From contig JBLDXI010000017.1 in assembly GCA_047495785.1 (NCBI GenBank), positions 1,054,001 to 1,118,000 of the forward strand: a DNA stretch of 64,000 nucleotides, read 5' to 3'. This DNA comes from Lepidodermella squamata. Its lineage: Eukaryota; Animalia; Gastrotricha. The notes beneath the pieces are model-generated. The model was not told where the DNA came from. It saw nothing but the letters and a program-made list of their open reading frames with translations, and ran no database searches. Positions 34,001 through 63,000 of the stretch are shown piece by piece; positions within the stretch are counted from its first letter, which is position 1, and each line of letters starts with the position of its first letter. The position numbers were made by a program, and so were the translations under genes.

Positions 34001-37000
34001 ATGATTTTCGATCAGCAACACCATAACCTGTATTTGACGTCTTTGTTTTCGATGACATTAACAGGCTCGCCTGCCGATTATTCTCAACAAGTTTTTGGCT
34101 CATCGGCCAACACATCGGCGAATCACAATTCGAGCTATTCCAACTCGGCGCATAATAACTCGAGCAGCGGTGTTTTGCTGTTGAATAGCAGTCATGACTC
34201 TTCGACGTCGATCGGCAACAGCCCGGCGTCGGGTACCGATCACTCGGGCTCGTTCTCAGCCGGAACGCCTGGCAGCGTAGCAGGCATGATGAACACGAGT
34301 GGTGGCAACAATAATCATCAACGCTCGATTTCAAACTCTGGCCTCATGTTTTCGTCATCGGCAACGCCGCCCATTGCTGATATGATGTCTTCGAATGGCC
34401 AGCAACAGCAGCAACGGCGGGCTGGCAAACAAGGCGGCGGGGCGCAGTGTCCCGAATGCGATAAACGCTTCAATAATTCATCGGCTTTGGCTAAGCACAA
34501 GCTGATGTAAGTTACTCATTTTTAAATTTTTAAATTTTTAAAAAATTATGAAAAATTTCATTGTCTCCGATTTTTATTTAAATTCTGGTGAACAGTAGAA
34601 GGGCAATTTTCCAAAAAAAAATCGGACATTACTATCGATTTACACGTTTTATAGTGTCTCGTCGCGCATTTTTTCCGGAAAATTCTTTGCTTCCTTTGAT
34701 GCTTTTTTAAACTTTTTTTTCTTAATTTTAGACACAGTCAAGAAAGGCGTTACTCGTGCCCGAAGTGTGGTAAAGGCTTCAAGCGTCAGGATCATCTGTA
34801 AGTAGCTATTTCCTTGATGAAAAATTCTCGAAAAAATCTATCGATTTTTCTTGCTAGATCCGGTCACATGATGACGCACGAGGAGCAGAAGCCTTACAAG
34901 TGTTGGGTTGAAGGCTGCGATAAGTCTTACTGCGACTCGCGTTCATTAAGGCGGCACCTCGAAAACCACCACGGCCAACACATCGAATCGCCCTTCATCT
35001 GCCCACCCGAGTACTCGGCCTCAGTGCCGACGTCGATGACGAGCAACAAGCCTAGCAACATCGAATCAGCCGCCAGCCTTAAGGCGGATCAATTTTTCTC
35101 GTACGAAGACGATCGGATTCGGCAGCTGGCTGAGTTGAACAACAGCAGCCAGCCGACGCTGAACAGAATGCCGGACTGCGTGAGCCGGCAGCAACACTTC
35201 AGCCCGATCACCCCGGCGCCCACGAGCCCAGGGCGCCGCGCCACCCTAGCCTCGCAGTCGTCCCTCGCCAGTGACCGGCAGTCGACAAGTAGCGGTAACA
35301 ACATCACGATTGTCTCGTGTTCGATGTGTTCGAAAAAATTCCGCAGTCTCGCCTCGCTGAACGGGCACATGAGAATTCACGGACCGAGACGGTCGACGTT
35401 GAGCGGTGTGGTTAAGGAGGACGTTTCGTCGCACGACGGCCCTGCCTCGGTCGGTCACAGCCGGCCCGCCTCGCCTATGAATAACCTACGGCCAATGGTT
35501 ATGGAGGGCCTGCTTAGCACGGTTGATAAACTGCCCCTCGGCTCGACTTCGAGTGTTTTCACGCCCGGGCCGTTATCTGCGGCGCAACCCTCGCAAATGC
35601 TGGCTCATCGGCAGATTCAGAATGCGAATCAGGAGTTGATGAATCACCAGGCGAGTTTCAACAACCGCCAATCGATGGATTGCCAACAACAGCAACCGCA
35701 GCAACAGCAACAGCCGCCTGTTTTGCGGTTCCATCAACAACCACCCCTTCCATTAGCCACCGTACCCCAGCAGCAGCAGCAGCAGCAACCACAGCAGCAA
35801 CACTGCGGCCCGCTTGACCTTGCGTTCGGCAACTCCGGAAATTCGCTTAGCGCTGCGTCGCAACAGGTATAATTGAATTTTCGTGTGTCGTTGTTCCCAT
35901 TTCCGATAAATTTTGTCAAATCATTTGAGCGGAATAATTGATTTAGCCGCAGAAAACGCGTTAGTTGCAAGGAAATAATGCGAAGAAATTTGATATGCAA
36001 TGTCACGCCAAGGGGTTGAGCTAGGAAAATAAATTTCAAATCGTGTCTTAATTAGACATGTCTTTGTCAATTAGGAGTCCAACCGTAACCCTAGATCTTC
36101 GTTCGTTCCAGGGTTTTGATTTGACGAAATAAAGGCGCTGCCTGAAAGAATAGCTTCATTGCTATCCTTTCATGGGCCTTGCTTTTAGTGTAAACAAATT
36201 TTCAATCCTAGATTCGTCCAAAAATGTCAATTGACAAATATTCGGAAATTTCAAGATTGTCTGGAAAAAAATTTGCTCGATATTCAACTCAGAAGTTAAA
36301 AAAATTGAAAAATGAAAAAAACTGAGTTGATAGCTATTTCAAAATAATTGAGAATTTTCATTGAAAATTTGTAAGTATTTTTAATTTTGAGAAGTTTTTT
36401 TTTAATTTTGATATTATGGATTTTTAAGATAGATTTTTTAAATTCTCAAAATGCTTCAATTTTCCAATTTTTGTTCGATTTTCCTAACAGAATACGGATG
36501 ATTATCACATGGCGCCTTCGATGCCGTCGTACTCGCAGAGCCAGGCTGGTGGCAACCAGGGTGCCAACAACTCGACCGCCTCGCTCGCCCTCGCCATGAT
36601 GAAAGCCGCGCTGCCGAGCTCGTTCGCCGTCGACCGCGTCGACCCTCGCTCTGCCTGGCTGTCATCGCTCTACAACCCGGATACATCAAACGGCCCCATG
36701 TCGCTAATGGCCCAAATGTATCAGCAGCAGCAGCAGCAACAGCAACAGCAACAACCTAACAACCAAGTTGTTGTACCCCAACCGCCGATCTCATCGCAAT
36801 TCCAGGCGCAATGCCAGCAATCACAGCCGAAATTCACCGTGCCGCAATCGCCGGGCAGTTTCCTGAGGTCGAGATTCGGCGTGCAACCCCCGATGCCGCC
36901 GAGTTTCAACTCATCGACCTCCTGGACACCGTTCCCGAACCAACGCCAGCCGGCGCCGTTGATGAAAGACATCGGAACGAGCCCGTTCGTGACAATTCCG

Positions 37001-39750
37001 AAAGATCGGCAGGTCTTCTTCCCGCCGGACAGCGACGACCAAACGTCAGGGTGTCTATCGACCCAACCTCAGTGTTCACCATCGACACCCGGCACGATCA
37101 GCGTAGTCGGCGATCACCCGCCACTTAGCGCTGGCCCCCTCAGCGCTGGCTATATTAGCGTAGTTGGGACACCCCCGCAACGATCGCCGGCAATTATGTT
37201 CGGCACGCCGGGTTCGAGCAGCCACTCGGGCGGCGCGAATTCGTCATCGGCCGGCAGCGACACCCTGCCGCCGTGTCGCATGATGTCGTCGACTACGCCG
37301 TGCCCGCCCAGCCCGATTGCTATCAATACAAATACGAAGAGCAACGTGCAAATGGGGCTGTTGATGCCGGCGCCTAGTCCGCACAAACTGCCGGGCGGGC
37401 ATCACCACCGCATGCCGCCGCCTATCGACTTGCCACCCCCGCCACCGAGCTTCCGTGCTAGACCGAAATTTTTCACAATTCATGAAAATGACGAAAACAA
37501 CCATCATCATAATCAGGTTTGTGAAGAAAATTCCTCATTTTGCGGTTTTAAAATTTTCAAAAATTAAATTAAAAAAATCGAGAATTGAAATTTTAAAATT
37601 GAAAATGAAACATAAATTTGTAAACTATTTTTTCGAATTTTTTAAATTTTAAATTCGATTTTAATATTAATTTTGAAATTGTTAAATTTATAATGAAATA
37701 TGAATTTTGAATTTTTTTGAAGTTTCGATTAAGATTTTGAAATTTGAAATTTAATTTGTGAATTTTCTCAGGGCGTCGCACCTCAAAGCAGTAGTCATCA
37801 GGTGCCAGCCGGGCCGAACCAGGACAAAGAAGACCATTTGTCTGATCTGGACTCAAGCCCGGAACTCTTCGACCAGTCGGACTTCGACCCGCATATCTAC
37901 CTACGGTCTCCGCCGCAGACCGCCCCGCCGGTACTCTTCGCCGGCGGCAGTGAAATTGACGCGAAAAAGATGCGCCACTTCTCGTTCGACGACTGTGACG
38001 TCGATGCCGTGAAACAGCGCGATCTCGAGCGTGACCTGTGCACGCCGTCGCCACCGCCGCCGGAAGAACTGGCCGCGCGAGCTCAAGGCCCCCTCCCTTC
38101 CCCGGCCGCGGTTTTCAAATCACCACCGCCGTTTTTCTCGCGAAAACCCACCGAAAATTTGACCCCGGCCAAGATCGAACCAGCCGCCGCTGTCGTTGTG
38201 CCACCCCCGGTTTTAGTCACCCAGTCGTCGGAGTCGGTCAAGGTTGAAACAGCAGTGGCGACTACAACCACCCACTCTACGTCATCGGTTTCCTCCGAAC
38301 ATTCCATAACATCAGGGACGCGAAAATCGAGACCAAGACCGCCGCCGTTGCCGATTCTCGACTCGAACTACGGCCCGGTCTCGCAACTACGGGCGCATAT
38401 TGACGCGTTGGGTAGCGCCAACTCGTCGCTACAGTCGGCTGGTACGGTTTCATCAGCCGCCTCGTCTGCCAGTTCGTCGTTCGGACTGCATCACCAGCAG
38501 CAACAACAACAACAGCCGGCTGTGAAGCCTGAACCGGTCGTGCAGATAAAACCAGCTTCCACCTCGTTCATACCTCCGTACACGCCGCCGCCGATTCTCA
38601 GCCCGTTCCGCATGACGCCGGGCACGTTCTGGGCGTTGAAACAAGCCGATTCGGCTAACAACCTCGCTTCATCGTCCGCTTCTTCCGTTTTCTTCAACTC
38701 GAGTTACAACAACGGCGATGGAACGCCGCTGAGCGACCGCAGACCGCGCATCAACGTCGGCCACCAATTCCAGGCCGAAATTCCGCCCTACCGCCGGCCG
38801 TCGCTAGCCATGCGTGACACTGACCGGGACGAGTTGATTTTCAACCCGAATTGCCTGGCGAATATCTCGGACGACCACATACAGGCGTTGTGTGAGTTGG
38901 CGCGGTCTTCCGCTGCCGGTTCGCCGCATGGTTCCAACATCGAGCTAGTTATGCATCTGTTAAGCGCGACGAATGGTAACATCGAGAAGGTCACTCTGTT
39001 GCTACTTAACGCGGGTGGAAACGCGGAATTGCCGTCTTCGGTCGCGAACTATCGATACCAGGAGAACGCGGTTTGGTCTGCGGAAGAAATCCGCCTTTTC
39101 ATCTCAGTTGTTGGGCAGTTGAAGAAGGACTTCTGGCAAATCTCAAAAGTGGTAAGTAATTTTTCTATAAAATCGATAATTTTTTTTAATTTGATTTTTC
39201 CGATCAGATGCGAACGAAATCGGTGAAAGAGTGCATCGAATTTTACTATTTGTGGAAGCGATTGTTCTCCGAGCTGAGCGCACCGCCGGCCAATGCGCAG
39301 ACAGGCGAGCCGCCGGCGAAACGGCAATGCCTAGGCCCGGTTTCGGAGACGCCCGCGCCATCGACCACCTCGTTCCGCCTCGGTGCCGCTAACACCAGAA
39401 TGCCTCAACAGGCCGACGCTTCGCGGCAAAATATTCATTTCTGCGACTTTTGCCCCAAGTAATTTTTTTAAATTATTTTGAATTCAAATTTTAATAATTT
39501 TAATTTTAAGGAGGATTTTTGTAATTTTTTCATTTTATTTTTTTGCAGAGTGTTTGACAAAAAACGGGCGAAAAGTTTTCATATGAAGCTCTACCACCCG
39601 GCTGCGTCCGCAGCATCGACGCCGGCCAGCGTGGCCGCCTCGCTTTTGACCTCATCAGCCGCGGCGGGCAAGACAACGTCGACCTGCTGCCAGCTGATAT
39701 TCGCCCCTGTCTCTTCGCCGAATGTTCACACAGCGCAAGTCGCGCAATGA
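34001..39750 (+). CDS. ZNF541/TRERF1/MIDEAS-family C2H2 zinc finger + ELM2-SANT HDAC-complex scaffold; exons 34001-34506, 34732-34797, 34858-35866, 36491-37516, 37772-39151, 39208-39458, 39549-39750
   Basis: Triple finger [49 protein letters not shown]...CWVEGCDKSYCDSRSLRRHLENHH is ZNF541-type. CSMCSKKFRSLASLNGHMRIHG and PYTPPPILSP are family motifs. ELM2 is PRINVGHQFQAEIP and SANT is WSAEEIRLF...KDFWQISKVMRTKSVKECIEFYYLWK. A final finger is CDFCPKVF...HMKLYH. Confidence 0.93.
35683..35800 (+). repeat. CAG/CAA poly-Gln coding tracts (further tracts at 36722-36754, 38495-38515 and 28782-28805)
   Basis: Runs of cag/caa codons are directly visible. Confidence 0.85.
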
Positions 39751-48670: not shown

Positions 48671-50865
48671 ATGTTTGTTGGATTTTTGTATTCGTTTGCT
48701 GCTCTAGTCACCCTGCTACCCGGCCGAGTTCGGGGTTATATCTACTGCGATGATAACTGCTCATCGTCCGGCATGTTTTGCGTCGCTGACGACCCAGCCG
48801 CATTCAGCGTCTGCGGATCCGGGGTTCGTTTAGGCACCCTGCGCTGCCAATCAGGTCTCTACTACGACTACACGCTATCAGCTTGTAACTGGCCGAACGC
48901 AGCGCCGAAGCCTCAATGCCCGTGCCAATCAGCCGCAGCTACGACAACCCCAGGTTCAACCAGCCAGGGTGACACAACCGCCGCATCATCGACTAGTACC
49001 ACCGCGGCTCCAGTAACCCGACCTCCGGTTCCGACTGGCTTCCAACGTATTTGCTACTTCACGAACTGGTCTGTCTACCGTTCAGGCCCGGCTAGCTACT
49101 ACGCCGGAAATGTCGACCCTTTCATGTGCACCCATGTGATCGTTGCGTTCATGTCGCTGACAAACGGCAAAATCTCCTACCTGGAAGCGTCAGATGGCGA
49201 TACGTTGAAGTTTTTGACAAATCTTCGCGATACCAAAAATCCGGCTCTGAAAATTATGGTGGCTATCGGAGGTTGGAATGCTGGCTCTTGGCCTTTCATT
49301 GATGTCGTAGCCAAAAATGAAACGCAAGACAGGTTTTATTTTGAAATTTGAAATTTTTTTCAAAAATTATTCGTCCATTTTCAGCTTCATTTCGCAAGCG
49401 ATTAATTTTTTGCGAAAAAATAATCTGGATGGCCTGGACATCGACTGGGAATATCCAACCGGTTATATTCCGCAATTTATCGAATGGATAACGGTATTTA
49501 CGATTTTTTCAATTTTAAATTATTAAATCTTAAATTTAATTTTCATTTTTCAAATACCTAAAAACCTGAGATAAAAATTTTCCTATTTTCTCCAGAAATT
49601 GCGCAATGCTTTCGAAACCGAAGCGAAATCGACTGGTTCTACTCGTCTCCTGTTGTCCGCTGCTGTTTCAGCCGGGCAAGCTACCATCGACTACGCCTAC
49701 GATGTCCCAAAACTCTCGCAAGCCCTCGATTTCATCAACCTCATGTCTTATGACTTAAACGGCGCTTGGAACCCAACAACCGGTCTCAATTCTGGGCTCC
49801 ATCCGCAAAATTCACAGGACCAGTTCAACGTCGAATGGTGCGCGAATTACTGGGTCACGAAAGGGGCGGAGCCTAGTAAGATTATGATTGGCGTGCCAAC
49901 TTACGGCCGAACGTTCAAGCTATGCGATACGACTGGTAACACGGGTATTGGCGCGAAAACTTGCGGTACCGGAAGTGGCGGCTATTTCACGGCAAGTGCT
50001 GGGTTTGAAGCTTACTACGAGTCGTGCTTGAAACTGCAGTGTACCACTACGAATTGGACCGTTGTTTGGAGCTCAGCTGGCGAGTCGCCCTATATGTATG
50101 CTGGTAATCAGTGGATTTCGTTCGAAAATGCGTCCAGCATCGCTGCGAAGGTTAATTTCGCAAAATCGAATAACTTTGGCGGCGTCATGGTTTGGGTAAG
50201 AAAAACTCGAAATTACGTGGTCGTTTATTTTTAACCTCTAATTTTAGGCTCTTGACCTGGATGATTTCCAAGACATTTGCGGGTCTGGAGTCAAGTCTCC
50301 CCTTATGAAAACTTTGGTCGCTGTGAGTTTTTTTTAGAATTTTCTCAATTTTTTTTATTTGATTACTTTTCAGGTAGCTACTGGAAATCCTTTGCCTCAA
50401 TTCAATGAAAATCCAAAAGCGGCAATTTCCTCACCTTGCGACCCTGGAAACAGCGGGTCGCCTTCCGATGGCAGTGCTACTGTGCCTCCTGGGACCGTCA
50501 TCGACCTAAATGATTGTATAATTAGCCAATTTTTTTGAAAATTTTTGCTTCTAGCTGATTCCATTATAAGGTGACGAAAACTGCAAATTTGATGGAACGT
50601 ATTGCGTACCGGATAACAGCCAGTCTTTCTATCAATGTCTAGCTGGTGTTCGCTACCCGCTTCAATACTGGTAATTGAATTTTCGAACATTGATTTTTTT
50701 CATAATTTCTCGGTTTACTTTTATAGCCAATCGAATCTCTACTACAACTACTTGAACAATGCTTGCGATTGGAAGGCTAATTACCCTGGTTGCAACTGCA
50801 CGATTCCCACGACTACAACGTCGACCCAAACAACACCGTTGGCCTCAACAACTGTTCAAGCTTAA
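48671..50865 (+). CDS. Chitinase 3 (SP-CBM14-GH18-CBM14); exons 48671-49332, 49385-49493, 49596-50195, 50248-50322, 50374-50515, 50571-50670, 50727-50865
   Basis: Same GH18 motifs including DGLDIDWEYP, with N- and C-terminal CBM14-type domains. Confidence 0.95.
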
Positions 50866-51074
50866 ATTACTGTTTCTAACTGTTTCTAACCGGCTTAAAT
50901 TAAAACTTGCCTGATTTAGATTAAATGCGATTGTTTGAACATTGTCTCGTCAACTCAATAAAATAGGAGGATGCGATAAAAAATGATGTTCTTGACACGC
51001 GTGCAAATGAAAACTCGCGCTTTCATAACTTGAGAAAATTTAAATAAATTCTCAGTTGAAATTTTGAGCTAGAA

Positions 51075-53295
51075 ATGAAAATTCCAATTTTTCTAGTTTC
51101 AACTGTATTTTATTGTTCTATCCTAAAATGCTCTGGCTACATTTATTGTGATAATAATTGCCGTAGTGGTGATGGCTATTTCTGCATCTCTGACGACCCT
51201 GCCTCGTACAGCGTTTGCAATGCTGGGTCTCGAATCGGCACCTTTCAGTGTGGGACGGGTCTGTGGTGGGACGCGGCTCAGAAAGTGTGTAACTGGCCGT
51301 CGAGTATCAAAGGCAAGCAATGCCCATGTGAAAATGGGAAACCAGTGATTAATCAGCCGACATTGTCCGATCAACCCACAACTACATCGAAAAAAATTGA
51401 AAACGAGAAGCGGAAACTCAGCTTACAAAAACCTCTTTTCAGGTTGGATTTTAACAGAATTTTGAATTTTTTGAATTTTAAATATTTAATTAAATATTAT
51501 AGAGATTTATTTTCTTTATGCTTTGGCTGCTAAAGTTGAATTTTCAATCATGAATTTTTTTTTAATTTTCCAAATAATATTAATCATTTTAAGGCGCAAT
51601 AAGGAGGATAAGTCGTTCAAGAGAGTCTGCTATTTCACAAACTGGGCAGTTTACCGAAACCCTCCAGCTCGATTCACCGTGGCTGATGTTGACCCGACGA
51701 TTTGCACCCACATTATAGTGGCATTTATGAATCTAGCTGGCGGCCGAATCTCATATCGAGAACATGGCGATGCTGGCACATTAGCCGCTCTCGCTAAAAT
51801 GCGCGATGAACAAAATCCTGATCTCAAAATAATGGTGGCGATCGGTGGCTGGAACGCGGGTTCTGGTCCGTTTGTAGAAATTGTCAATTCCGAAGCCAAA
51901 ATGGATGCGTTCATCGATCAATCGATTGAATTTCTTCGCGAAAACAACATTGATGGCCTTGACATGGATTGGGAGTAAGTCATCTCTTACATCTTATCAA
52001 AATTTTTATTTAAAATTAAAATAGGTACCCTATAGGCTACAAGAGCCAGTTCTCAAATTTGATGCAGGTATTCTGAAAAATTGTTTTAATTTCATTTTTA
52101 ATATAATTTAAATTTTAGAAAATAAGTGATGCGTTTGATGAAGAAGCTGAATCTACAGGAAATAGTAGGCTAATTTTATCAGTCGCGGTCGGTGTTGGAA
52201 AGGATAAAATCGATAAGGCATATGACATACCGGCGATTTCAGACGCTGCAGATTTCATTAATTTGATGACCTATGACCTCGCCGGGCCGTGGGACACGAA
52301 AACAGGTCACAATGCCGGCATTGGAAAGCAATCACATGACGATCAGTTCAATCTACACTGGGTCGCTGAATACTGGCTAGAAAATGGCTGTAATTCGCGG
52401 AAAATGGTCCTTGGAATACCTGTTTATGGTCGGAAATTTCGGTTGACCAAAATTCGGAATGCACAAATCGGCGCCGAGGCATGTGGACCAGGTGATCCGG
52501 GTCGATTTACGGGCGAGTCTGGCTTTGAGGCTTATTATGAATCCTGTTTAAAGCTGCAGTGCTCTAAACGACGTTGGACACCAGGTTGGGATGAAATCGG
52601 CCAAGTTCCTTACATGTATTCCGGGGATCAGTGGATTTCATTTGAAAATCAATCTAGCATCATTGCGAAGGTTGAATTCGCTAAATTAAATGGCTTTGGC
52701 GGCGTCATGGTTTGGGTAAAAATTTCACCTTGAATATCGGCAAGTCTATAAAATTGAACATTTGAAACCCTAGACATTGGATCTGGACGATTTTTCTGAC
52801 ATGTGCGGCTGTGGCGTAAAATTCCCATTGATAAAAACAATAATTGCGGTAAAATCGATTTTCATTTTTTCATCGAATTTCAAAATTTTCCCTGATTCAA
52901 AAGATAGTAGCTAATAAACCTGTGCCTAAGCTGAGCAGGGTGCCCAAGCCATCAACCGAACCATGCGATCCATCCGATTCGGCTTGGATGGAACGAGATG
53001 ACGTAATCCCGGGGAATGAAGAAGCGAATTCGAAATCGACGGAAAATATTGATTTATCAATTTGCGACGATAACTGCGCCAAAGACGGTGTTTATTGCGT
53101 TCCAGATAATCCCAACGCGTTTTATAAATGTTTGGCCGGCGAAAGATATCAACTGCAGTATTGGTAAGTTTTTCACATGACGATATGCAGCTAACATTTT
53201 TACTATTTTTCAGTCAACCGGGATTGAAATACAACTACATCAGCGAATCATGCGATTGGCCAGTCAATTACAAAAAATGCAACTGTGAAATTTGA
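51075..53295 (+). CDS. Chitinase 4 (SP-CBM14-GH18-CBM14), the most divergent paralog; exons 51075-51442, 51594-51974, 52025-52067, 52119-52715, 52774-52848, 52904-53163, 53214-53295
   Basis: CYFTNWAVYR, DGLDMDWEYP, MTYDLAGPW and GVMVWTLDLDDF. The linkers are charged rather than Thr- or Gly-rich. Confidence 0.94.
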
Positions 53296-53535
53296 AAATG
53301 TGTGTAATTTTACTTGAGAAATAAAGTAATGTCCCAGAATTGGGATTAAAACTCGTGCGAATACGAAATATTAGTTTTTGTTACGCGTTCGCACTTCTTT
53401 CGCTCATCGCCGCTCATCAATTTATCTCAGCAATCACACCCTTTTTAAACAATGGTTCCCATGCCCGCCCAGGTAATAACAGGGCGTCTGGGAGTTATGC
53501 ACTATCGCACGCCTTGATCGGGACATTTCATCGCG

Positions 53536-53543
53536 TATATAAA
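53536..53543 (+). promoter_or_regulatory. Candidate TATA box, chitinase 5
   Basis: TATATAAA about 70 nt upstream of the ATG at 53610. Confidence 0.5.
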
Positions 53544-53609
53544 TACGGCGTGATTAAGGTGGGTAAAAATTATCATTTCTTTTTCTCGTCTGTGATACGT
53601 TTATTTCTG

Positions 53610-56604
53610 ATGATTATTTCGTTAGTCTTCGCGCTTTCGGCCATTCATCTAGCGCATGGTCTAACCTACTGTGATAACGGCTGCAAGACTGGCAATGGCT
53701 ATTTTTGCGTCGATGGCGACAGCGCCGCTTTCACTGTTTGCAACAATGGCAATCGTATAGCAACGTTGCGGTGCTCGAACAACTTACTTTGGGACCCCGT
53801 GAACGGTGTGTGCAACTGGCCGACTGCAATCGCTAAAGCTTGCTCATGTGGCGGCTCGGCGACTACGACTACTACGACGTCGACAACTACTACGCCCGCA
53901 GCGACCACCACTCGTGCAACAACTACCACTACCACCGCAGCAACTACTACTACTACTACAGCGGCTACGACGTCAACTTCGACTACACCGCGGCCAACTA
54001 CTACAACAAGCACGACTACAACGACTCGGTAAATTTTCAAAAAAAAATGTCCCGACCTTTATCAAATTCAAGAAAATCATTCAAAATTATTCGAGGAAAC
54101 TTTTTGAATTAGCGAAAGATTTGATTATTAGTTCGGCATAAATAATCGATATTCGAACGATTTCCTAAATTCCATAAAAAAAATTATCATTTCTCCGATA
54201 TCGGATGTCGGTTCCACCATTATTGGTTTCGAATTTTCATTACCGCATGAAAATGGTTCCAAATACTTGCGCCACCAAAATAGAGGTTTTAGCTCTCAAT
54301 TTTCAAGCATTCTAGCGCTAAAATTCCCAGATTTTTCGCGATGCCGAATTTTCCTTTCTTGATTGAAAATTATTACCTGTGTGGCGTGTGGCCCTCAAAA
54401 GCAATCTTACACTCTCAGGTTTGTACAATAGTTTTCATTCTTGGGTTACACAAGACCGCAGATATCGAAAAAAATCAACTTTTTCAAAATCGATAATGAT
54501 GTCTTCTCAGTAGCTAACTCTGTAGGCTAAGGAATTGCTCGTAAATTGGCCGCTCATAGCGAAAAATACGCATCATAAAATGAGAATGCTATCTGTTAGG
54601 CGTGATAATAATAAGAAAAATTAGGTAATAAGATTTTTTGGGTAAATTTGGTGCTGCAGCCTCAATTTAGAATCGGAACCTTTTTATAAGGTTGCGCGCA
54701 TTTTCAGTGGCATTTTTCCTACATAGTCTTGTCAATTTTCACGAATCGCAAATAATTTGTCTTTTCTTTATCATGATAGACCTACTACTACGACTACTAC
54801 TACTACTGTTACTACGACCAGAGCGTCCACGACTACCGCCACTACTCGTTCATCACCGCCAACTGATTTCCTCCGCGTTTGTTACATCACAAACTGGGCC
54901 GTCTACCGTCAAGGTCCGGCCAGCTTCACGGCTGCTAACGTCGATCCTACGCTATGCACCCACATCATCGTCGCTTTTATGAAACTGTCCGGCGGGCAAA
55001 TTTCGTACCTCGAAAGCGCAGATGCAGACACTTTGGCGACCCTGGCTAAAATGCGCGATACCCAGAACCCATCGATGAAAATTATGGTTGCTATCGGCGG
55101 CTGGAATGCTGGCTCTTGGCCGTTCACAGAAGTTGTGAAATCAAACGAAACAATGGACGCCTTTGTCGTTCAAGCCATCTCATTTTTGCGGCAAAACAAT
55201 ATCGACGGCCTGGATCTTGATTGGGAGTCAGTTCATTTTTTGATTAATTAAAACTGAATTAATTAAATAATTTTTTCAGATATCCTCAGGGCTATGTGCC
55301 TCAATTCAGCCTGTGGTGCCAGAAGCTGCGTGATGCTTTTGAGGCTGAAGCTATTGCAACAGGTAGAAGTCGTCTCCTGTTATCGGCGGCCGTTGCCGCG
55401 GGTCAGGGTACCATCGACTGGTCCTACGACGTGCCGAAACTGTCGAAAGCCATGGATTTCATCAATCTCATGTCCTACGATTTGAACGGAGCGTGGAGTG
55501 CCGCGACCGGCCTCAACTCCGGTCTGCGGCCTCAAGATGCCAGCGACACCCTCAACATCCAATGGGCCGCTAATTACTGGGTGAAAAAGGGCGCAGATAT
55601 CAAGAAAATGATCATCGGCGTGCCAACTTACGGCCGAGTTATCAAAATCTGCAACCCTGGCCCGACTCAAACTGGCATGGGATCTAAGGCATGTGGTACT
55701 GGCAATGTCGGTCCTTGGACGAATGAGGCAGGTTTTGAGGCTTACTATGAGTCGTGCTTGAAGCTGCAATGCCCGGCTGGTAATTGGACATCGGTTTGGA
55801 ACGAGGCTGGACAGGCGCCGTTCATGTATTCCGGCAATCAATGGATTACCTACGAAAATGTCAACAGCATTGCGGCTAAGGTCAACTTTATCAAATCGAA
55901 CAACTACGGCGGCGTCATGGTTTGGGTACGTTTTCAATTTTTTTCGGAATTTTCCAGAATTTAATTTAAAATTTTAATTTTAGACACTCGACCTCGATGA
56001 TTTCCGCGACATTTGCGGTCATGGTATTAAATCGCCGCTCATGAAAACTCTGCTTGCCGTAAGTTGTTTCAAAATGAATCATCGAAAATCTATCATTTTG
56101 GTTAAATTTTAGGTTGCTACCAACCAACCTGTGCCAACCATCAATTCAGTTATGAATCCGTCGGTCAAGCCGTGTGATCCTCTCAACACTGGTAGCACTG
56201 GTGGCACCAGCGGCGGGTCATCAGGCGGCGATGGCTCTGGTACCAGCGGCGGTGGTACCAACGCGAATCTCTCAATTTGCGACAAGAATTGCGCAAAAGC
56301 TGGTCTGTACTGCGTTCCAGACAACCCGAACGCTTTCTATCAATGCCTCGCCGGGGTTCGCTACCCGCTTCAGTACTGCCAGACTGGTCTTGTGTACAAC
56401 TACAAGACGCAGGGATGCGATTGGCCGGCTAATAATGTCCCCTGTGATTGTGTGTTACCTACAATTACTACTACGGCAGCGCCGAGTGCTGGCAAGAGGA
56501 AGCGATTTTTCAGCAAAAATCTTCAGCATCGTCATTACTACCGTTATCTTCCGTTCTTGAGCAATAACCGTCGCTACTATGAATACCCCGAAAATAGTCT
56601 GTGA
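53610..56604 (+). CDS. Chitinase 5 (SP-CBM14-poly-Thr-GH18-Gly/Ser linker-CBM14-tail); exons 53610-54028, 54780-55226, 55280-55925, 55984-56058, 56113-56604
   Basis: CYITNWAVYR, DGLDLDWEYP, MSYDLNGAW, GVMVWTLDLDDF and two CBM14-type domains. The C-terminus has GKRKR followed by a Tyr/His/Arg-rich tail. Confidence 0.95.
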
Positions 56605-56913
56605 TTTCTAGCTTGCGAATTCCACTAGTTACTTCCGTAGTTTTCAAAATTGATTTGTTGTTGGTTTAATGAGCACTTGATTTCAATAATAAGGCAATAA
56701 ACAAGAGCATAAGTGAGTGATTATTCTTCATTTTTCCTATAAATTGGCGTAGAAGCGACTCCTTATCAGCGGCGTTATCGCATTCGAGGCGGCCACCGAA
56801 AGGGGCGTATAATGTTGATAAAGTATCAACACCACGCCCTTCATCTGATAGAGTCACACATTATTCTAGTTATTCGTTTCTTCCGGCGTTGGCTTCCTTA
56901 ATAGGTATATAAA

Positions 56914-58537
56914 ATGACTAGCGATTTCGCAATCCAGCCATTCGCGCTTCGGCGGGTGAATGATGACGAAAAATTCGGATTTGCCCTGAAAACGCAGGCA
57001 TTAACGCCTGATGGGGCTTTGAAACAACTGGTCATCAGCAGCATAAATCCCGGCGGCCCGGCTGAGAGAGCTGGCCTTCAAGTTGGAATGGTTGTTCTCG
57101 ACATTAACGGTGTCCCTCTCACCTCCGGCTCCGTGGCTGATGCAGGCCGTGCGATTGCTTTAGCCGGGCCAGGCCAGCCTACGATGGTTAATGTTAGGGT
57201 CGAAGTGCCTAGAGGCCTCCCCCGCCTTAGTGCTCTACCCACCCCGCCGAGTTTAACCGGTGGAGCAGCGCCTGTCACCCCTGTCCCTCGGAAAACCCTA
57301 GCATCACCCTCGACGCCTACCTCTCAACCACGGCAGTCGTTAGTTGCAAATCCGATTAACACCAGTGATGCAATTGTCCTCGATGTTGGCGCTTGGCAGT
57401 GTAAAATTGGCTTCGCAAACCAAACTGCCCCTATGATTTTCCCGACAATTGTTGGCCGGCACAAACTGGCGGGTGTAGGGCCCATGTCACCCCTAGGCGG
57501 TGTCCCTAGCATGTACGGCTCTACGGCTTTCAGCAAGAAAGGCATGCTCAAATTGAGTTACCCATACGAGAGAGGTGTCGTCAAAAATTGGGACGACATG
57601 ACTGCACTTTGGAAATACGCTTTCAAAGATGAGCTCCGAACAGAGCCAAAGGATAGAGCAGTATTATTGACAGGTTAGATTCGATTTTTTCCGGTTCTTT
57701 AATCATTATCTATTTTAAATAGAGCCCTTGTTCAACGGCAAGGAGCAGCGTGAAAAGACTGCTCAGATCATGTTTGAAAAGTTCGAAGTCTCCGCCTTGA
57801 ACATTGCCTTGTCAACACTTCTTGGCATGTATGCAACTGGGCGAACTAATGACTCGCTTTTAGTTGATGTCGGCGATAGCCTTACTCAAATTCTGCCGGT
57901 TCGACACGACTACAACGCTGCGTTTTTGGCCTCGCAGAAGTATAACCTAGCTGGTAGCGATGTGTCTGAAAGACTGGCGCAGCTACTCAGCGGTGAAACC
58001 GGGCACAGTTTTACAGCTCTGGATTATAATTTGCGAGAAATCAAAGAAAAATTCGGTGCTGTGGCTGTTAATTCCCAGGCTGCCGAGCAGACTGTTGCGA
58101 AGGAAAAATTCACTCTGCCTGATGGCAATGTTATAGAAATCGGCTCCGAGAGATTCAGGTGTACCGAAGTTCTTTTCGACCCTGCTCGAGTTGGAATGGC
58201 CAACATTAAAGGAATACCAGAGGCGGTTATTACAGCCGCAGCTAAATGCGACGCTGAAGCTCCGACCTTGTTGCAAAACATTGTTGTCAGTGGTGGTTCG
58301 ACTGTGTTCCCAGGCTTTGCCGAACGTCTACAAAACGACATAAAAGCCCAGACTATTCAAGTTTTTGGCCGGCAGCTTGATGTTAAGGTGGCGACCGAAC
58401 GTCACGGCAAGTTATCTGCCTGGTTAGGTGGTGTTGCGGTTTGCAATTTGGCCGGATTTCAGAACCAATGGATAAGCAAGGCCGAGTACGCTGAACTTGG
58501 TTCTGCGGCTGTTCATCGAAAAGCTGCGCCGATTTAA
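56914..58537 (+). CDS. PDZ domain-proline-rich linker-divergent actin-like protein fusion (~524 aa); exons 56914-57673, 57723-58537
   Basis: PDZ: EKFGFAL...VISSINPGGPAERAGLQVGMVVLDING. Actin fold: AIVLDVG...CKIGFA, FPTIVGR, LSYPYERGVVKNWDDM, VLLTEP.FN..EQREKTAQIMFEKF, REIKEK, FTLPDGNVIEIGSERFRCTEVLF, NIVVSGGSTVFPGFAERLQ, SAWLGG, WISKAEYAELG...VHRK. AATAAA near 58626. Confidence 0.92.
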
Positions 58538-60056
58538 GAAATCAGTGACGCGAAAACATTGCTGCAATTGAACAAACTTTTACCGTATATGTACACCATC
58601 AATAGTAGTTATACCCAGGTGATTTAATAAAAAATAGTTTAGAATGAGTAGTAGCGTTTATTTGAGTAAATTAACTGTCGTGCCACATGCCATTCCCAAT
58701 CAACATTTTTGAAAAATCAGTTATTCGTCGAGAAACACATGCATTCAGACAAAACACCGAGATTGCAATGAAATGAGCAGACTGTCGATTACAAACCAAG
58801 CTTCAATCATTATCATTTACATCAACAGTTTTCATGTATTTGACAATGAAAATGGTAGAAGAAAGATGGATTAAATATGTAATATTCAAAAAAAGAGTCG
58901 AATCACGTGCCAAACTGCTATTTCAGAGTCGGTTGTTTTCAATTTAAGGCCTGAGGATTTCGTTCAAAAATGTTTCTAGAACTCTCGAATCCGATTCTTA
59001 TCACAAAATTGCCAGTATCGTCATTGATAGGTATAAGAATACGAATAGAAACAAATTTATAAACATTTTGCAAGCAGGACGTTTTGTAAATTTGTAAAAT
59101 TGTTACATAGCCAAACATATGTCTTCGCGGATTTGGCTTCGTATTTCTTCTGAATCATTCTTTGAATTCTTTGTAGGCGAAAACTCCAATGTCCAGCCGG
59201 CTTCTTTGATATAAGGATGTGAGGATCTTTGTGCTTTCGCTCAGATTTTTACCAAATTTTTCGTACTGATAGAAATATACCAATCATTCGCCACCGAGTT
59301 GCTAGTTTTGATTAACGGGAATGAAAGAACCTTGGTGAGTTCAGATTTCCGAAGTACAGGCCAGCGTAGGTCGAATTGGCAGTGGGAGGCGCCTTGTTCA
59401 AAATACTCAACTTTTTTCAATCCATCTCATGGATTTATCAATGCCAGCAATTCTTCTTCGGTCATTTCAAGTCGGCCAAGTCAGCCGCCAGTTTCAGTCG
59501 ATAAAGCAAACGACTGTCGATATCTAGAAACAGAAAAAACATCTCCATGTCGGATCAGGAATAATATGCCTTTAGTTGCATAGCGTCCTTGGAAGTTCAG
59601 ACAAAAAGGAAAAAATATATGGGTAAATAATGCAGCTTCTCCTGACCACAGGATTCTGACATCATGCCATCGAGCCGCACGATTTTGGATGGTATAAGAC
59701 ATAAGACATAGGACAGATTTATTCGAATCGCCTCAGACAGATACGTTTACGAATTATATAACACCTACAGGATTTTGGGTGGTTTCCAAGTCCAAGAAAT
59801 TCAAAAAGTTACCGCCAAAACATGTTCACGCAAATTTAAAAAAAACTACAAAGCCAATACAAAAATGTAAACATTATTTTAATTTGTGTTTGTAGAAAAC
59901 ATAGTTACTACATGCGTCCTTGTCAACGCAGCATTTTCGGCAGGCGCCGGGTGGGATGTGTATAGCTTCACACGTTTAAAGCCACAGGCGGAGAGTCAGG
60001 GCTTATTGTTGCCAATATTCATCTTGTTTAATGTTTTATTTCCGGCAAAAACTCAA

Positions 60057-63000
60057 ATGGTAGCTTCAAAGACTCTACACTGGGGATGTATAGAGGTGGC
60101 AGCATCGTTGATATGGACGAACTGGGAAATAGGCAAAGAGTACACTCGGTTGCTAAATGTCAAGAACATTGGACCGCGGGCAAGAAAACTGAAGTTTCGG
60201 TATATATTAGTGACATTGGAAAACTTGATTACTTTCAACCTTTATCAATTCTTCCAAGGATACCAAGCAGTCGATTCTTTGTCACGCTGTACCCGAAGCC
60301 GATAATTTTGAGCCCTGGTACGACTTTTCAGTTACCTGTAACTTTCAAGCCGATGGAAAATGTCAAATATCATGATGCGATCGAATTTTATTCCAAGGTA
60401 TTTTGACCACTTGAGTCTTGAAGCTCAGTTAGTAATTAATTCTGTTTCAGGACGAGGGCTTTGCGCCATTTTCTGTCGGTTTGCAAGGCGAGCTCCCTAA
60501 GCATGTTCTTCATTGCCCAGAGGCACTCAACATCAATATTTGTGCTGTCGGAGAGTCCGTCTCGTTACCTTTCGAGGTTACAAATAAATCGTTAGCTCAT
60601 CATTGATTTCAAAGATAGTTGTCTAAACCTTTCCAAATTTCAGAAACTTGCGAACATCTTTCTCTTGGCTTGTCGATCAACCGTTTGCTATCACTCCTCA
60701 AAGCGGATTTATTGACGGAGGTGCTTCTCTCAAATGTCAACTGTCTTTTTCTCCCAAGGAGGCTCGCACTTACGTTATGGAGGCTGTCTTAGCTTATGGT
60801 GAAAACTTGCAGGAAGACGATGGTTCTGAAACATTGAAGGAAACTTGCAAACTGAGTGGAATCGGAAAATTCCCTCATGTTGTTGTCAGATACGAAGGCA
60901 GCTCTCTGGGTAAAGACGGAAAGGTTGAATTTGGCCAAATCCCATACGGAAAGAAAATTCAAAAGACTTTCCAAGTTGTGAATATGTCACCAGCCGTCAC
61001 TCGATTTCGTATTAGAAGGCGTCATCCTCAAATTAAAAATGTAGATAAAGCCTTCAAATTATCTACGAAAGAGGGGATTTTGCCTGCACTGGGTTATGTC
61101 GACGTAGAAGCGTCATTCGAACCCACATGTCCTGGTTTAAAGTTCGAGGACCATTTTATAGTGGAACCAGCGTGTTTGGCTAGTCGAGCATCTTTCTCAC
61201 TATCAGGCTCTTGTGTCTCCCCAGTTGTATCCCTGCAGCCAACTGTTTTGGAATTCGGATGCTGCTCAGTAGTCCCTAATCCGCCGATTCTGAAAACATT
61301 TACCATTACAAACCACAGTCCGTTCTCGGATGCTGCGTTTGAAGTGATTGTCGACAATACGGTCGGCGTTTTCAAATTTTCATCACTGAGTGGCATCTTA
61401 AAACCGGGTGAAAATCGCCTCATCTCCGTTAGCTTTTATGCGCCGCTACCCATAAACTTCTACCGACGTGTTACCATATTGATTGCTCACCATGACCCGC
61501 TCATGATCGACTTGATTGGCACAGCCTTCAGCATGGATTGTCACCCTCCGGCATTGAAGGCCGAACATTTAGGCCGATATCGAGCTGCTGTTGACAGAGG
61601 TCTTGCTCGGTACTTCCCAGAGCAGTTGCAGATGTTTTTACAGGAGGGCAAATTGAAGGTCGATGACGCCGGGGCCCTGGAAGTTGTCGATGCCCTGGCC
61701 CTGCCTGGCTACTCCCCACCAAACGTTAGCTGCTCAACCATCGCCCCAATAGACGAATATTTCGACGACGGATATCACTCTGCTCATGTTTCTAACAGCC
61801 CATTTGTCAGTTTCGATCACGAATGGGTTCACATGGCAGCGTCTAATAACACCCTGAAAAAGCCTCAAACTATTCACTTGACAAATCACACGAAAGGCAA
61901 AATTATTGCACAGTTCACAGTTGTTCCAGAAAACGAAAAGTCGCAGAGTCATTTTGTTGTCGAGCCCATGAAATTGGAAGTTCTTGCCGGTCGATCAACA
62001 GCTTTTACCGTCAGACTATCAGACGCTGCTTTAGCCGCGTTTTCGACAGTTGGGACTTTCTTAACGTCGAATATTGAATGTTACTGTTATCACTCTGTTC
62101 AGCGGGAACATACCTTGGTTCAGCAAGAGGTTGTTATGCCGCCGTGGTGTTTGTTACTCAACGTCACAGCTAGCACTTATCCGTTAAATGCCGAAAGAGC
62201 TGTTCCGATGGTGCTTACCTTCAACCCTTTAGACGCAATTTTCTTCCCTTCCCTCGTTATCGGCGAAACGGCGTATCGAACGCTGCTAATTTCCAACAAA
62301 CTCGACCTACCCGCGTTGATAAATATCGAAAAGCCAACAGATGAGAGCTTCGAGGTCAAACCTAGCATTGCGGTAGTTAAACCGGGCTCCCACGTCGTAG
62401 CAACCGTTCGATTCCGGCCTAATGACGCGCAAATTCTTCAGCAACAACTGAAAGTTAACGTTAACGAAGTGGCAAAAAATACGAAAGAACTAACGCTTTA
62501 CGGAGCTGCCGAACCGCCAGATGTTGTTTTCGATGAAGGTGATCTGGTTTTCATTGCACCGACTTGCATTAACTCAGAGTCATACCTGCCTTACACGATA
62601 AGAAACGCGAGTAGACAACGAGTTGAGTATCAATGGCACGTTCCAGTTCAATATCGCGATGTTCTAACAGTCAGGCCAACTATTGGCTGCCTGGATATTC
62701 GCGGATTTCAAACTTGCAAATTCATCTACACCCCAAAGGTAGGTCAAATAATGATCAAATATGAAGGGATTTTTGTGATTCATTTTTCGATTTTCAGAGT
62801 GAATCCAGACAAATGATGAAAATTAATTTGGCTACCAGAGTCATTCCGTCGACAGTAATAAACCCGGATAACGTCCCGACTCGCGATTTTCGAGTTCGAA
62901 TCGTTGCTGAAGGTTGTGTTGGCAGTCTAATGGCCCGTCAAACTCTTCACAACTACGGATCGTTGCGAGTTGGCCGATCTCAACGCGTTCAAGATTTCGT

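What the first reader, a model, noticed from the sequence alone, without database searches (positions are those of the whole stretch)
56914..58537. PDZ-actin chimera: a scaffold domain fused in-exon to a full-length divergent actin
Seen: a complete PDZ domain (~aa 8-98, with KFGF at the GLGF loop), a ~50-aa Pro/Ser/Thr linker and the N-terminal ~100 residues of an actin fold sit in one uninterrupted exon. The linker is GC-rich, unlike local introns, so the fusion is not a gene-merging artefact. Known: conventional actins and Arp1-10 are essentially single-domain proteins, and I do not recall a characterised PDZ-actin protein. PDZ domains bind the C-termini of membrane proteins. Inference: this may be a lineage-specific actin that tethers directly to membrane receptors or junction proteins, acting as a seed, cap, anchor or specialised filament.
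Basis: partly seen in the sequence, partly recalled or inferred. Interest (0 to 1): 0.9.

Follow-up and report, generated by a model that had tools for sequence, protein, structure and literature searches.

The report
PDZ domain fused to orphan actin
An unidentified invertebrate has a real, expressed and conserved gene that joins a PDZ docking domain to a complete but very divergent actin-like domain, a layout I found described nowhere, although its function is untested.

Summary
A two-exon gene (56914-57673, a 49-nt GT..AG intron, 57723-58537) encodes 524 aa. It has a canonical PDZ domain (KFGF loop), a 52-aa linker that is 48% Pro/Ser/Thr, and a full actin fold.

- **Expression:** A public run that behaves like RNA has the intron removed. 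It shows no depth in the upstream spacer and unbroken depth across PDZ, linker and actin.
- **Selection:** Listed variants in the coding sequence are 23 synonymous to 2 non-synonymous, and 10 to 1 within the PDZ.
- **Relatives:** An exhaustive HMMER search of 1.84 billion representatives found one true relative. It is a 537-aa protein with the same layout, encoded as a single uninterrupted ORF on metagenome contigs. Identity to it is 53% in the PDZ, 35% in the linker and 55% in the actin fold. That gene is also under purifying selection (14:1).
- **Actin domain:** It is only 44% (window) and 36% (relative) identical to conventional actin. It falls outside the Arp1, Arp2 and actin clades. It has lost Gln137 and His161 but keeps the phosphate-loop scaffold.

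The best reading is a lineage-restricted, non-canonical actin-related protein that a PDZ domain targets to partner C-termini. It probably does not build bulk filaments. The closest precedents are Arp53D, filactin and POTE-actin. The function is inferred, not shown.

The parts
56902..56913 (+). In-frame TAG (56902-56904) and a short 5' leader before the start codon. The AG at 56903-56904 is a possible (trans-)splice acceptor.
   Evidence: Sequence read directly. RNA-like depth in X1 starts in the bin 56894-57047 and is zero over 56586-56893. The acceptor role is inference only.
56914..57673 (+). Exon 1 (codons 1-253 plus the first base of codon 254): PDZ, linker and the first ~100 residues of the actin fold
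   Evidence: ORF, Pfam matches, spliced translation
56935..57207 (+). PDZ domain (aa ~8-98). The carboxylate-binding loop is K20-F-G-F23. The alpha-B helix begins at about S72-V-A-D.
   Evidence: PF17820 at E 4.9e-11 and PF00595 at E 2e-9. Weak matches to the GRIP1, Mint, Scribble, TIP-1 and Shank PDZ domains in the PDB. 53% identical to the relative, with the 8-mer NDDEKFGF identical.
57208..57363 (+). Linker rich in Pro/Ser/Thr (aa 99-150), probably disordered, with many S/T-P sites
   Evidence: 25 of 52 residues are P/S/T. 35% identical to the relative, where it is about 13 aa longer. There is no Met between M91 and M174, so the actin fold has no start codon of its own.
57364..57673 (+). 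N-terminal part of the actin fold (aa 151-253): P1 loop D-V-G-A-W-Q-C-K and a family-specific D-loop with an insertion
   Evidence: PF00022 at E 3e-19, profile positions 4-100. Residue map.
57674..57722 (+). Intron, 49 nt, GT..AG, phase 1
   Evidence: Sequence. X1 contig joint 57671->57721 (the cut +2 fits equally), skipping 49 nt, depth 80. The DNA run X2 keeps these letters.
57723..58537 (+). Exon 2: rest of the actin fold (aa 254-524) and the TAA stop at 58535-58537
   Evidence: PF00022 at E 3.4e-58, profile positions 104-409. The best PDB matches are all conventional actins, E ~5e-52.
58538..58560 (+). Short 3' UTR. An RNA-like contig ends at 58560 and continues into a 26-letter homopolymer.
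   Evidence: Loose end in X1 (table 7). The printed strand of the homopolymer does not fit a poly(A) tail; this is unresolved (note).

Best explanation
This is a genuine protein-coding gene for a 524-aa chimeric protein. It has an N-terminal canonical PDZ domain, a flexible ~50-aa Pro/Ser/Thr-rich tether, and a complete but highly divergent actin-fold domain. The actin fold forms its own orphan lineage of non-canonical actin-related proteins.

**Shown.**
- The gene model and the splicing.
- RNA-like coverage of the whole ORF.
- Purifying selection on both domains.
- A second organism with the same layout in one uninterrupted ORF.
- No internal start codon for a free actin domain.
- The phosphate-loop scaffold is kept (D11, K18, D154, G156, G301-G302-S/T303).
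- Both hydrolysis residues are lost (Q137 to S/A, H161 to Q). G15 is replaced by Trp and H73 by Arg.
- The D-loop, W-loop, hydrophobic plug and subdomain-3 contact residues are heavily changed.

**Inferred mechanism.**
- The PDZ groove docks the protein onto the C-terminal tail of a membrane or scaffold partner. This step resembles the Arp53D N-terminal tail, which is necessary and sufficient to place an actin fold at special structures.
- The tether then lets the actin-fold module reach out.
- That module probably still binds a nucleotide but turns it over slowly or not at all.
- It probably acts as a locally anchored Arp-type binding or capping surface for actin or actin-binding proteins, not as a bulk filament subunit.
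For: **Gene model.**

**Domains.** Pfam matches lie above the curated cut-offs.

**Expression.**
- Run X1 has the 49-nt intron removed, and also the 54-nt intron of the upstream gene.
- Depth is zero over 56586-56893 and 33-80 in every bin from 56894 to 58587.
- One contig (57073-57332) spans the PDZ C-terminus and the linker.
- No loose ends or joints lie inside the ORF other than the intron.

**Selection.**
- 23 synonymous to 2 non-synonymous among the listed CDS variants: P(<=2 of 25) = 1.4e-12 under neutrality.
- In the first 102 codons (PDZ), 10:1, P = 1e-5.
- In the second species, two samples differ by 14 synonymous to 1 non-synonymous, P = 3e-8.

**Relative.** P0001 and P0151 (537 aa) have PDZ plus Actin as one ORF on L001 8550-10163 and L082 1820-3433. 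Identity is 53% in the PDZ, 35% in the linker and 55% in the actin fold.

**Residue map.**
- The P1 loop is 88% and the P2 loop 75% identical between the two orthologs, but 50% and 38% identical to actin.
- The D-loop is 60% identical between the orthologs and 13-20% identical to actin.

**Fold.** AF2 of the relative's actin domain gave pLDDT 76. Its best structural match is actin (Z 40, 38% identity), ahead of Arp3, Arp4 and Arp8.

**Tree.** The two PDZ-actins form a 100/100 clade on a stem of 0.81, outside the Arp1, Arp2 and conventional-actin clades. The clade identities were confirmed.

**Analogy.** Arp53D's N-terminal tail is necessary and sufficient for its localisation (PMC8291977).
Against: - No experiment or structure tests PDZ ligand binding, nucleotide binding or polymerisation.
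- X1 is only guessed to be RNA by the tool. I infer RNA from the spliced joints and the empty spacer.
- Contigs cannot prove a single transcript.
- The variant list is the tool's 'best supported' subset: 40 of 98 are shown.
- Only two lineages are known, so conservation arguments rest on two sequences.
- The family-specific but conserved D-loop and P-loops could equally serve a polymer of its own.
- An N-terminal fusion on a long linker is sterically compatible with filament incorporation, because the actin N-terminus lies on the filament surface (general knowledge).
- The full-length AF2 model failed (pLDDT 46), so no inter-domain contact could be assessed.
Confidence: 0.5

Rival explanations
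1. Specialised filament, seed or cap. The actin fold polymerises with itself, or adds to the ends of conventional filaments. The PDZ then staples that polymer or filament end directly to receptor or junction tails.
For: - The fold is complete with no net indels in subdomains 3 and 4 (264 aligned residues on both sides).
- The LPDGN(V/K)IE motif at the subdomain-4 tip and much of subdomain 1 are kept.
- The D-loop is replaced by a family-specific version that is 60% conserved between the orthologs. This pattern would be expected if it still makes a contact.
- The N-terminal position of the fusion faces outward in F-actin (general knowledge).
Against: - Q137 and H161 are both lost, which removes polymerisation-coupled ATP hydrolysis.
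- Identity to actin is only 25% in the W-loop, 31% in the plug, 33% over 283-294 and 20% in the D-loop. All are below the domain average of 43%.
- F375 and Y166-Y169 in the target-binding cleft are changed.
- The overall divergence exceeds that of Arp1 and Arp2.
Confidence: 0.25
2. Arp-type subunit of a complex that is not a filament (dynactin-like, chromatin-remodelling or axonemal). In this reading the PDZ is an assembly module and not a membrane tether.
For: - Most Arps work as complex subunits (PMC8291977 introduction).
- An AU test cannot reject a grouping with Arp1 (p = 0.29).
- Structural neighbours include actin-like proteins of trypanosomatid axonemal doublets (31% and 27% identity).
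- The downstream neighbour gene is CFAP65. Adjacency alone is weak evidence.
Against: - The pairwise score to actin is higher than to Arp1 or Arp2.
- None of the class-specific insertions seen in Arp4-8 is present: exon 2 aligns 264 to 264 residues with actin.
- In the ML tree the pair lies outside the Arp1 clade (100/99) and the Arp2 clade (100/100).
- PDZ domains usually bind short C-terminal tails at membranes (general knowledge).
Confidence: 0.15
3. Artefact, or a young non-functional chimera. Either two neighbouring genes were read through by chance or by mis-assembly, or a recent fusion is drifting neutrally.
For: - The protein is absent from the searched protein collections apart from one metagenome relative.
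- The actin domain evolves quickly: 55% identity between the two lineages.
Against: - The same layout occurs in an independent assembly of another organism, as one uninterrupted ORF.
- Three studies hold the window's gene.
- There is no stop codon and no Met between the domains.
- RNA-like coverage is continuous and spliced.
- Synonymous changes are in strong excess in both species and within the PDZ itself.
Confidence: 0.03

Closest known systems
Arp53D and other non-canonical (orphan) actin-related proteins of animals (PMC8291977)
   Same: - A lineage-restricted, fast-evolving actin fold, further from actin than Arp1 or Arp2.
- An N-terminal addition that, in Arp53D, is necessary and sufficient to target the fold to special actin structures.
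- Kept by selection.
   Different: - Here the addition is a folded, recognisable PDZ domain on a 50-aa tether, not a 40-aa unstructured tail.
- The PDZ is as conserved as the actin fold (53% against 55%), whereas the Arp53D tail is its fastest-evolving part.
- The tissue of expression is unknown here.
Filactin of Dictyostelium and Entamoeba (PMC2441452)
   Same: A large N-terminal non-actin region fused in one polypeptide to a C-terminal actin domain.
   Different: - The actin domain of filactin is described as 'extremely homologous to conventional actin' and is classed as an actin. Here the domain is 36-44% identical and lacks Q137 and H161.
- The N-terminal part is not a PDZ.
- Filactin is amoebozoan, not animal.
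POTE-actin chimeras of primates (PMC7073761)
   Same: A lineage-specific in-frame fusion of a protein-interaction module (ankyrin repeats) to an actin module at the C-terminus. The intron-poor actin part here (one intron; none in the relative) is at least compatible with a retrogene origin.
   Different: - POTE-actin carries a nearly unchanged beta-actin retrogene and is evolutionarily young.
- The PDZ-actin domain is old enough to have diverged to 55% between two lineages.
- It has remodelled nucleotide and contact loops.
Arp1 (centractin) and Arp2
   Same: Actin fold of similar length without large insertions. The G-I/V-V-K-[DN]-W-[DN]-D-M motif resembles Arp1, which is why the pattern scan retrieved Arp1 and Arp2 genes.
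   Different: - In the ML tree it lies outside the Arp1 clade (100/99) and the Arp2 clade (100/100).
- It is 35-38% identical to Arp1 and 30-36% to Arp2, less than to actin.
- Arp1 and Arp2 keep the DNGSG/DNGTG loops, and they have no PDZ.

Membership tests
Actin/Arp superfamily (Pfam PF00022, actin fold) | Full-length match to the actin profile above the curated cut-off | tested here: met
   Exon 1 scores 69.3 bits and exon 2 scores 197.6 bits against a cut-off of 27. Together they cover profile positions 4-409 of 410. The relative P0001 scores 270 bits over positions 2-408.
Actin/Arp superfamily (Pfam PF00022, actin fold) | Four-subdomain actin fold | tested here: met
   Tested on the relative's domain only. 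The AF2 model has pLDDT 76. VIA-align gives Z 40.0 with rmsd 2.4 over 340 residues to actin, and Z 31-39 to Arp3, Arp4 and Arp8.
Conventional actin | Very high sequence conservation and clade membership | tested here: not met
   Identity to actins is 44% (window) and 36% (relative). The pair lies outside the actin clade in the ML tree. An AU test does not reject a sister grouping (p = 0.22).
Conventional actin | ATP-hydrolysis residues Gln137 and His161, Gly15 in the P1 loop, His73 | tested here: not met
   Q137 is S/A, H161 is Q/Q, G15 is W/W and H73 is R/R in the window protein and the relative.
Conventional actin | Nucleotide-binding scaffold (D11, K18, D154, G156, G301-G302-T303) | tested here: met
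   All are kept in both sequences, with S or T at position 303. K213, E214 and K336 are kept only in the window protein.
Arp1 (centractin) | Falls inside the Arp1 clade | tested here: inconclusive
   The ML tree puts it outside a 100/99 Arp1 clade (clade identity confirmed). The AU test does not reject a forced grouping (p = 0.29). The pairwise score to Arp1 is lower than to actin.
Arp2 | Falls inside the Arp2 clade | tested here: not met
   It lies outside the 100/100 Arp2 clade (identity confirmed). Identity to Arp2 is 30-36%. The AU test did not finish.
PDZ domain (PF00595 / PF17820) | Profile match above the curated cut-off | tested here: met
   PDZ_6 scores 42.6 bits (cut-off 27) and PDZ scores 38.2 bits (cut-off 23.2). 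The relative scores 28.1 and 31.8 bits.
PDZ domain (PF00595 / PF17820) | Carboxylate-binding loop of the x-Phi-G-Phi (GLGF) type before strand beta-B | tested here: met
   K-F-G-F at aa 20-23. The 8-mer NDDEKFGF is identical in the relative and is the longest identical stretch in the PDZ.
PDZ domain (PF00595 / PF17820) | Binds C-terminal peptides | not testable with these tools
   The residue at alpha-B1 is Val (window) or Thr (relative), not His, so a class I ligand is unlikely. This is an inference from the alignment.
Non-canonical (orphan) Arp | Lineage-restricted, divergent actin fold outside Arp1-Arp10 | tested here: met
   One relative cluster was found among 1.84 billion representatives. 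None covering the PDZ was found in 241 million metagenome records. The best PDB-cluster identities are 38% to actin and 31% or less to anything else. Arp5, Arp6 and Arp10 were compared by structure only.
Filactin / POTE-actin type fusions | Near-conventional actin module fused to an Ist1-like or ankyrin N-terminal part | tested here: not met
   The N-terminal part is a PDZ and the actin module is highly divergent.

The most novel reading that the evidence does not exclude
The PDZ-actin could be the subunit or nucleating seed of a separate, lineage-specific actin-like polymer. The polymer would be assembled directly on the C-terminal tails of membrane proteins. Its own co-evolved D-loop and cleft contacts would replace those of F-actin, and it would lack hydrolysis-driven turnover. 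That would be a second, membrane-templated filament system built from the actin fold in an animal.
Probability: 0.1. Interest if true: 0.85.

Novelty: new variant of a known kind. Interest (0 to 1): 0.55.

Why it matters
Actin-fold proteins are among the most constrained proteins in eukaryotes, and they are nearly always targeted indirectly, through separate binding proteins. This gene wires a standard tail-recognition module (PDZ) directly to an actin fold, and selection has kept the combination in at least two lineages.

It offers a natural experiment on two questions: how an actin fold is re-purposed after it loses hydrolysis residues, and how N-terminal targeting modules specialise Arps. 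The second question was opened by the work on Arp53D.

The gene also adds a domain architecture that appears to be missing from the protein collections and papers I could search. Together with the unverified PH-actin note, it hints that this animal lineage may have several domain-fused orphan actins.

Tried and rejected
1. **Full-length AF2 model of the relative** with a mixed alignment: pLDDT 46, unusable. No inter-domain contact or PDZ groove could therefore be examined, and both prediction jobs are spent.
2. **Apparent second and third relatives.** P0002, P0003 and the top 'Globodera actin' hit P0152 are tandem or partial actin mispredictions without a PDZ. Ten other long proteins with N-terminal extensions before an actin domain also have no PDZ.
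3. **Word-index search with the relative's first 270 residues** found only itself. The ESM Atlas gave only generic actin clusters.
4. **JGI metagenome scan.** The 80 kept loci match only the actin part at 32-58% identity (mostly 32-46%). They were useful only as a source of Arp1 and Arp2 sequences.
5. **Self-binding of the PDZ to the protein's own C-terminus.** I considered this unlikely because the tails are not conserved as ligands...AAPI in the window protein against ...SSPLH in the relative. It was not tested structurally.
6. **Naming the organism.**
   - Exact look-ups of two window ORFs found nothing.
   - A search with the CFAP65 piece found nothing at E 1e-30.
   - Run names are coded.
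   - The presence of CFAP65 argues for motile cilia.
7. **Resolving the origin of the actin domain.** AU tests cannot reject a grouping with either Arp1 or conventional actin. The Arp2 test did not finish.
8. **Poly(A) tail.** The homopolymer at 58560 is printed as T on the + strand. This is unresolved.

Full report
**Observation**

The window holds an ATG-initiated ORF at 56914-57678 and a second ORF in the next frame at 57728-58537. Between them lies an AT-rich 49-nt stretch that starts with GT (57674) and ends with AG (57722).

Joining 57673 to 57723 restores the frame through a split Glu codon. The result is a 1575-nt CDS of 524 codons. The junction reads VLLTEPLFNGKEQREK, which corresponds to the actin LLTEAPLNPKANREK segment.

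Pfam gives the following matches:
- Exon 1: PDZ_6 (E 4.9e-11), PDZ (E 2e-9), and Actin profile positions 4-100 (E 3e-19).
- Exon 2: Actin profile positions 104-409 of 410 (E 3.4e-58).

The linker (aa 99-150) has 25 Pro/Ser/Thr in 52 residues. It is the most GC-rich part of the locus, at 0.59-0.62. An in-frame TAG lies 9 nt before the ATG.

**Is it one expressed gene?**

One search for public runs found three studies that hold the stretch. I laid four runs on 55200-59800.
- Run X2 covers every bin, including the intron, so it is DNA.
- Run X1 is flagged only as a guessed RNA run, but it behaves like RNA:
  - It has a contig joint that removes exactly the 49-nt intron (depth 80).
  - It has another joint that removes a 54-nt GT..AG intron in the upstream chitinase gene.
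  - It has no depth at all over the 300-nt spacer 56586-56893.
  - It has unbroken depth of 33-80 in all bins from 56894 to 58587.
  - One of its contigs (57073-57332) runs from the PDZ C-terminus through most of the linker.
- No joint or loose end lies inside the ORF other than the intron.

Contigs cannot prove a single molecule. However, the protein has no Met between M91 and M174, and M174 lies inside the actin fold. The relative has none before M202. A free-standing actin domain therefore has no start codon in either species.

A contig ends at 58560, 23 nt after the stop, and continues into a 26-letter homopolymer. The strand printed for it does not fit a poly(A) tail, and I could not resolve this.

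**Selection**

Of the variants that the tool listed within the CDS, 23 are synonymous and 2 are not. With 76% of sites non-synonymous, the chance of 2 or fewer non-synonymous changes in 25 is 1.4e-12. Within the first 102 codons (the PDZ) the split is 10:1, P = 1e-5. The listed variants are the tool's best-supported subset (40 of 98 shown).

**Relatives**

I ran an exhaustive HMMER search with exon 1 (PDZ, linker and the actin N-terminus) against 1.84 billion cluster representatives. It returned two proteins below E 1e-30.
- **P0001** (537 aa, E 1.4e-70) aligns over residues 8-253 and has PDZ plus Actin in Pfam.
- **P0002**, together with P0003, is a tandem-actin misprediction.

P0001 is encoded as one uninterrupted ORF on a 10.3-kb ENA metagenome scaffold, next to exons of an SNF transporter. 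Its near-identical copy P0151 lies on a contig from a second sample. The two copies differ at 15 nucleotides, 14 of them synonymous (P = 3e-8).

Identity between the window protein and P0001 is 53% in the PDZ, 35% in the linker and 55% in the actin fold. The PDZ is thus as constrained as the actin fold. Its most conserved stretch is the carboxylate-binding loop, where NDDEKFGF is identical.

Further searches added nothing:
- A word-index search of 5.8 billion proteins with the relative's N-terminal 270 residues found only itself.
- A pattern scan of 241 million metagenome records found only ordinary actins and Arps.
- The ESM Atlas showed only generic actin clusters.
- Ten longer 'extended actins' from the hit list have no PDZ.

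**What kind of actin fold?**

Exon 2's best PDB matches are all conventional actins (E about 5e-52), aligned 264 to 264 residues without net indels.

Pairwise identities are as follows:

| Comparison | Window protein | Relative |
|---|---|---|
| to conventional actin | 44% | 36% |
| to Arp1 | 38% | 35% |
| to Arp2 | 36% | 30% |

For scale, Arp1 is 57% and Arp2 is 50% identical to actin in the same comparison.

In a maximum-likelihood tree (LG+C20, 45 rows), the two PDZ-actins form a 100/100 pair on a long stem (0.81). They lie outside the Arp1 clade (100/99), the Arp2 clade (100/100) and the conventional-actin clade. They sit loosely with two other long-branch orphans. The clade names were confirmed against the PDB. 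AU tests do not reject a forced grouping with Arp1 (p = 0.29) or with actins (p = 0.22), so the origin is unresolved.

An AF2 model of the relative's actin domain reached pLDDT 76. It matches actin best (Z 40, 38% identity). It then matches an axonemal actin-like protein of Leishmania (31%), followed by Arp3, Arp4, Arp8 and the rest at 16-27%.

**Residue map on actin numbering**

- **Kept in both:** D11, K18, D154, G156, G301-G302-(S/T)303, Y/F143, A144, and the LPDG motif at 242-245.
- **Changed in both:** N12 to V, G15 to W, Q137 to S or A, G158 to S, H161 to Q, H73 to R.
- **Also changed:** Y166, E167 and G168 in the W-loop, I345 to A, and F375 to A or S with a 2-3-residue C-terminal extension.
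- **Phosphate loops:** P1 and P2 are 88% and 75% identical between the two orthologs, but only 50% and 38% identical to actin.
- **D-loop:** it carries an insertion. It is 60% identical between the orthologs but 13-20% identical to actin.
- **Contact surfaces:** the W-loop, plug and 283-294 region are 25-33% identical to actin, below the domain average.

I read this as a nucleotide pocket that is still used but has lost the two residues that actin uses to position the attacking water. The filament-contact surfaces no longer look like those of F-actin. This is the usual pattern of an Arp.

**Mechanism**

Shown: the fusion is real, obligate, expressed and selected in both parts.

Inferred:
- The PDZ has a canonical loop. 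It has Val or Thr, not His, at alpha-B1, so it probably does not bind class I ligands.
- It docks on the C-terminal tail of a partner.
- The Pro/Ser/Thr tether has many S/T-P sites and is a flexible, possibly phosphorylated leash.
- The actin fold acts as a locally anchored Arp-type module that binds actin, filament ends or actin-binding proteins.

The closest functional precedent is Drosophila Arp53D. Its 40-aa N-terminal tail is necessary and sufficient to place an actin fold at fusomes and actin cones (PMC8291977). Filactin (PMC2441452) and POTE-actin (PMC7073761) show that N-terminal modules fused to actin exist, but both carry near-conventional actin.

I give about 0.5 to this reading. 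I give 0.25 to a self- or co-polymerising anchored filament or cap, 0.15 to a role as a complex subunit that is not a filament, and 0.03 to an artefact or neutral chimera.

**Context**

- Upstream, on the same strand, are GH18 chitinase genes with peritrophin-A domains. Downstream is CFAP65.
- Notes from this scan describe the genome as that of an animal that uses spliced-leader trans-splicing.
- They also mention an unverified PH-domain-plus-divergent-actin gene elsewhere in the genome. I tested neither note.
- I could not name the organism.

**Novelty**

Full-text searches found no paper with the terms PDZ-actin, actin-PDZ or PDZ-Arp. Broader searches found nothing relevant. I could not query InterPro. 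The gene is best filed as a new variant of a known kind: a non-canonical Arp whose N-terminal targeting part is a bona fide PDZ domain.

Noticed in passing
window 48671-56604 (+): Pieces of GH18 chitinase with CBM14 (peritrophin-A) and a mucin-like stretch lie at 48671-49351, 53340-54032, 55296-55964 and 56131-56604. These suggest at least two chitinase-like genes in tandem. The 54-nt intron at 56059-56112 is confirmed by a spliced contig in run X1.
   Followed up: partly
window 59886-62816 (+): The downstream neighbour is CFAP65 (cilia- and flagella-associated protein 65, with several Ig-like domains). The animal therefore has motile cilia or flagella. A search for named relatives of the 722-aa piece found nothing at E 1e-30.
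   Followed up: partly
window 58560: An RNA-like contig ends 23 nt after the stop codon and runs into a 26-letter homopolymer. The homopolymer is printed as T on the + strand, not the A expected of a poly(A) tail. No AATAAA lies upstream.
   Followed up: no
window 34814-35872 and 36509-37567 (+): Two adjacent ORFs of exactly 352 aa. The second has no Pfam match and its exact product is not on record. They may be a tandem duplicate of an unknown gene.
   Followed up: no
window 59363-59413: DNA run X2 replaces 49 letters with 'AC' (ends GC..CT). This is an indel polymorphism between strains in the region between the PDZ-actin gene and CFAP65.
   Followed up: no
L001 1197-4330 (-): The metagenome scaffold that carries the PDZ-actin relative also carries several short SNF (sodium:neurotransmitter symporter) pieces, presumably exons. 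This supports an animal origin for that contig. The relative's gene has no intron where the window gene has one.
   Followed up: no
P0147, P0148 (protein representatives): Two other long-branch orphan actin-like proteins (377 and 351 aa, 32-36% identical to the PDZ-actin fold) group loosely with the PDZ-actin pair in the tree. P0148's best PDB matches are conventional actins. The grouping may be long-branch attraction.
   Followed up: partly
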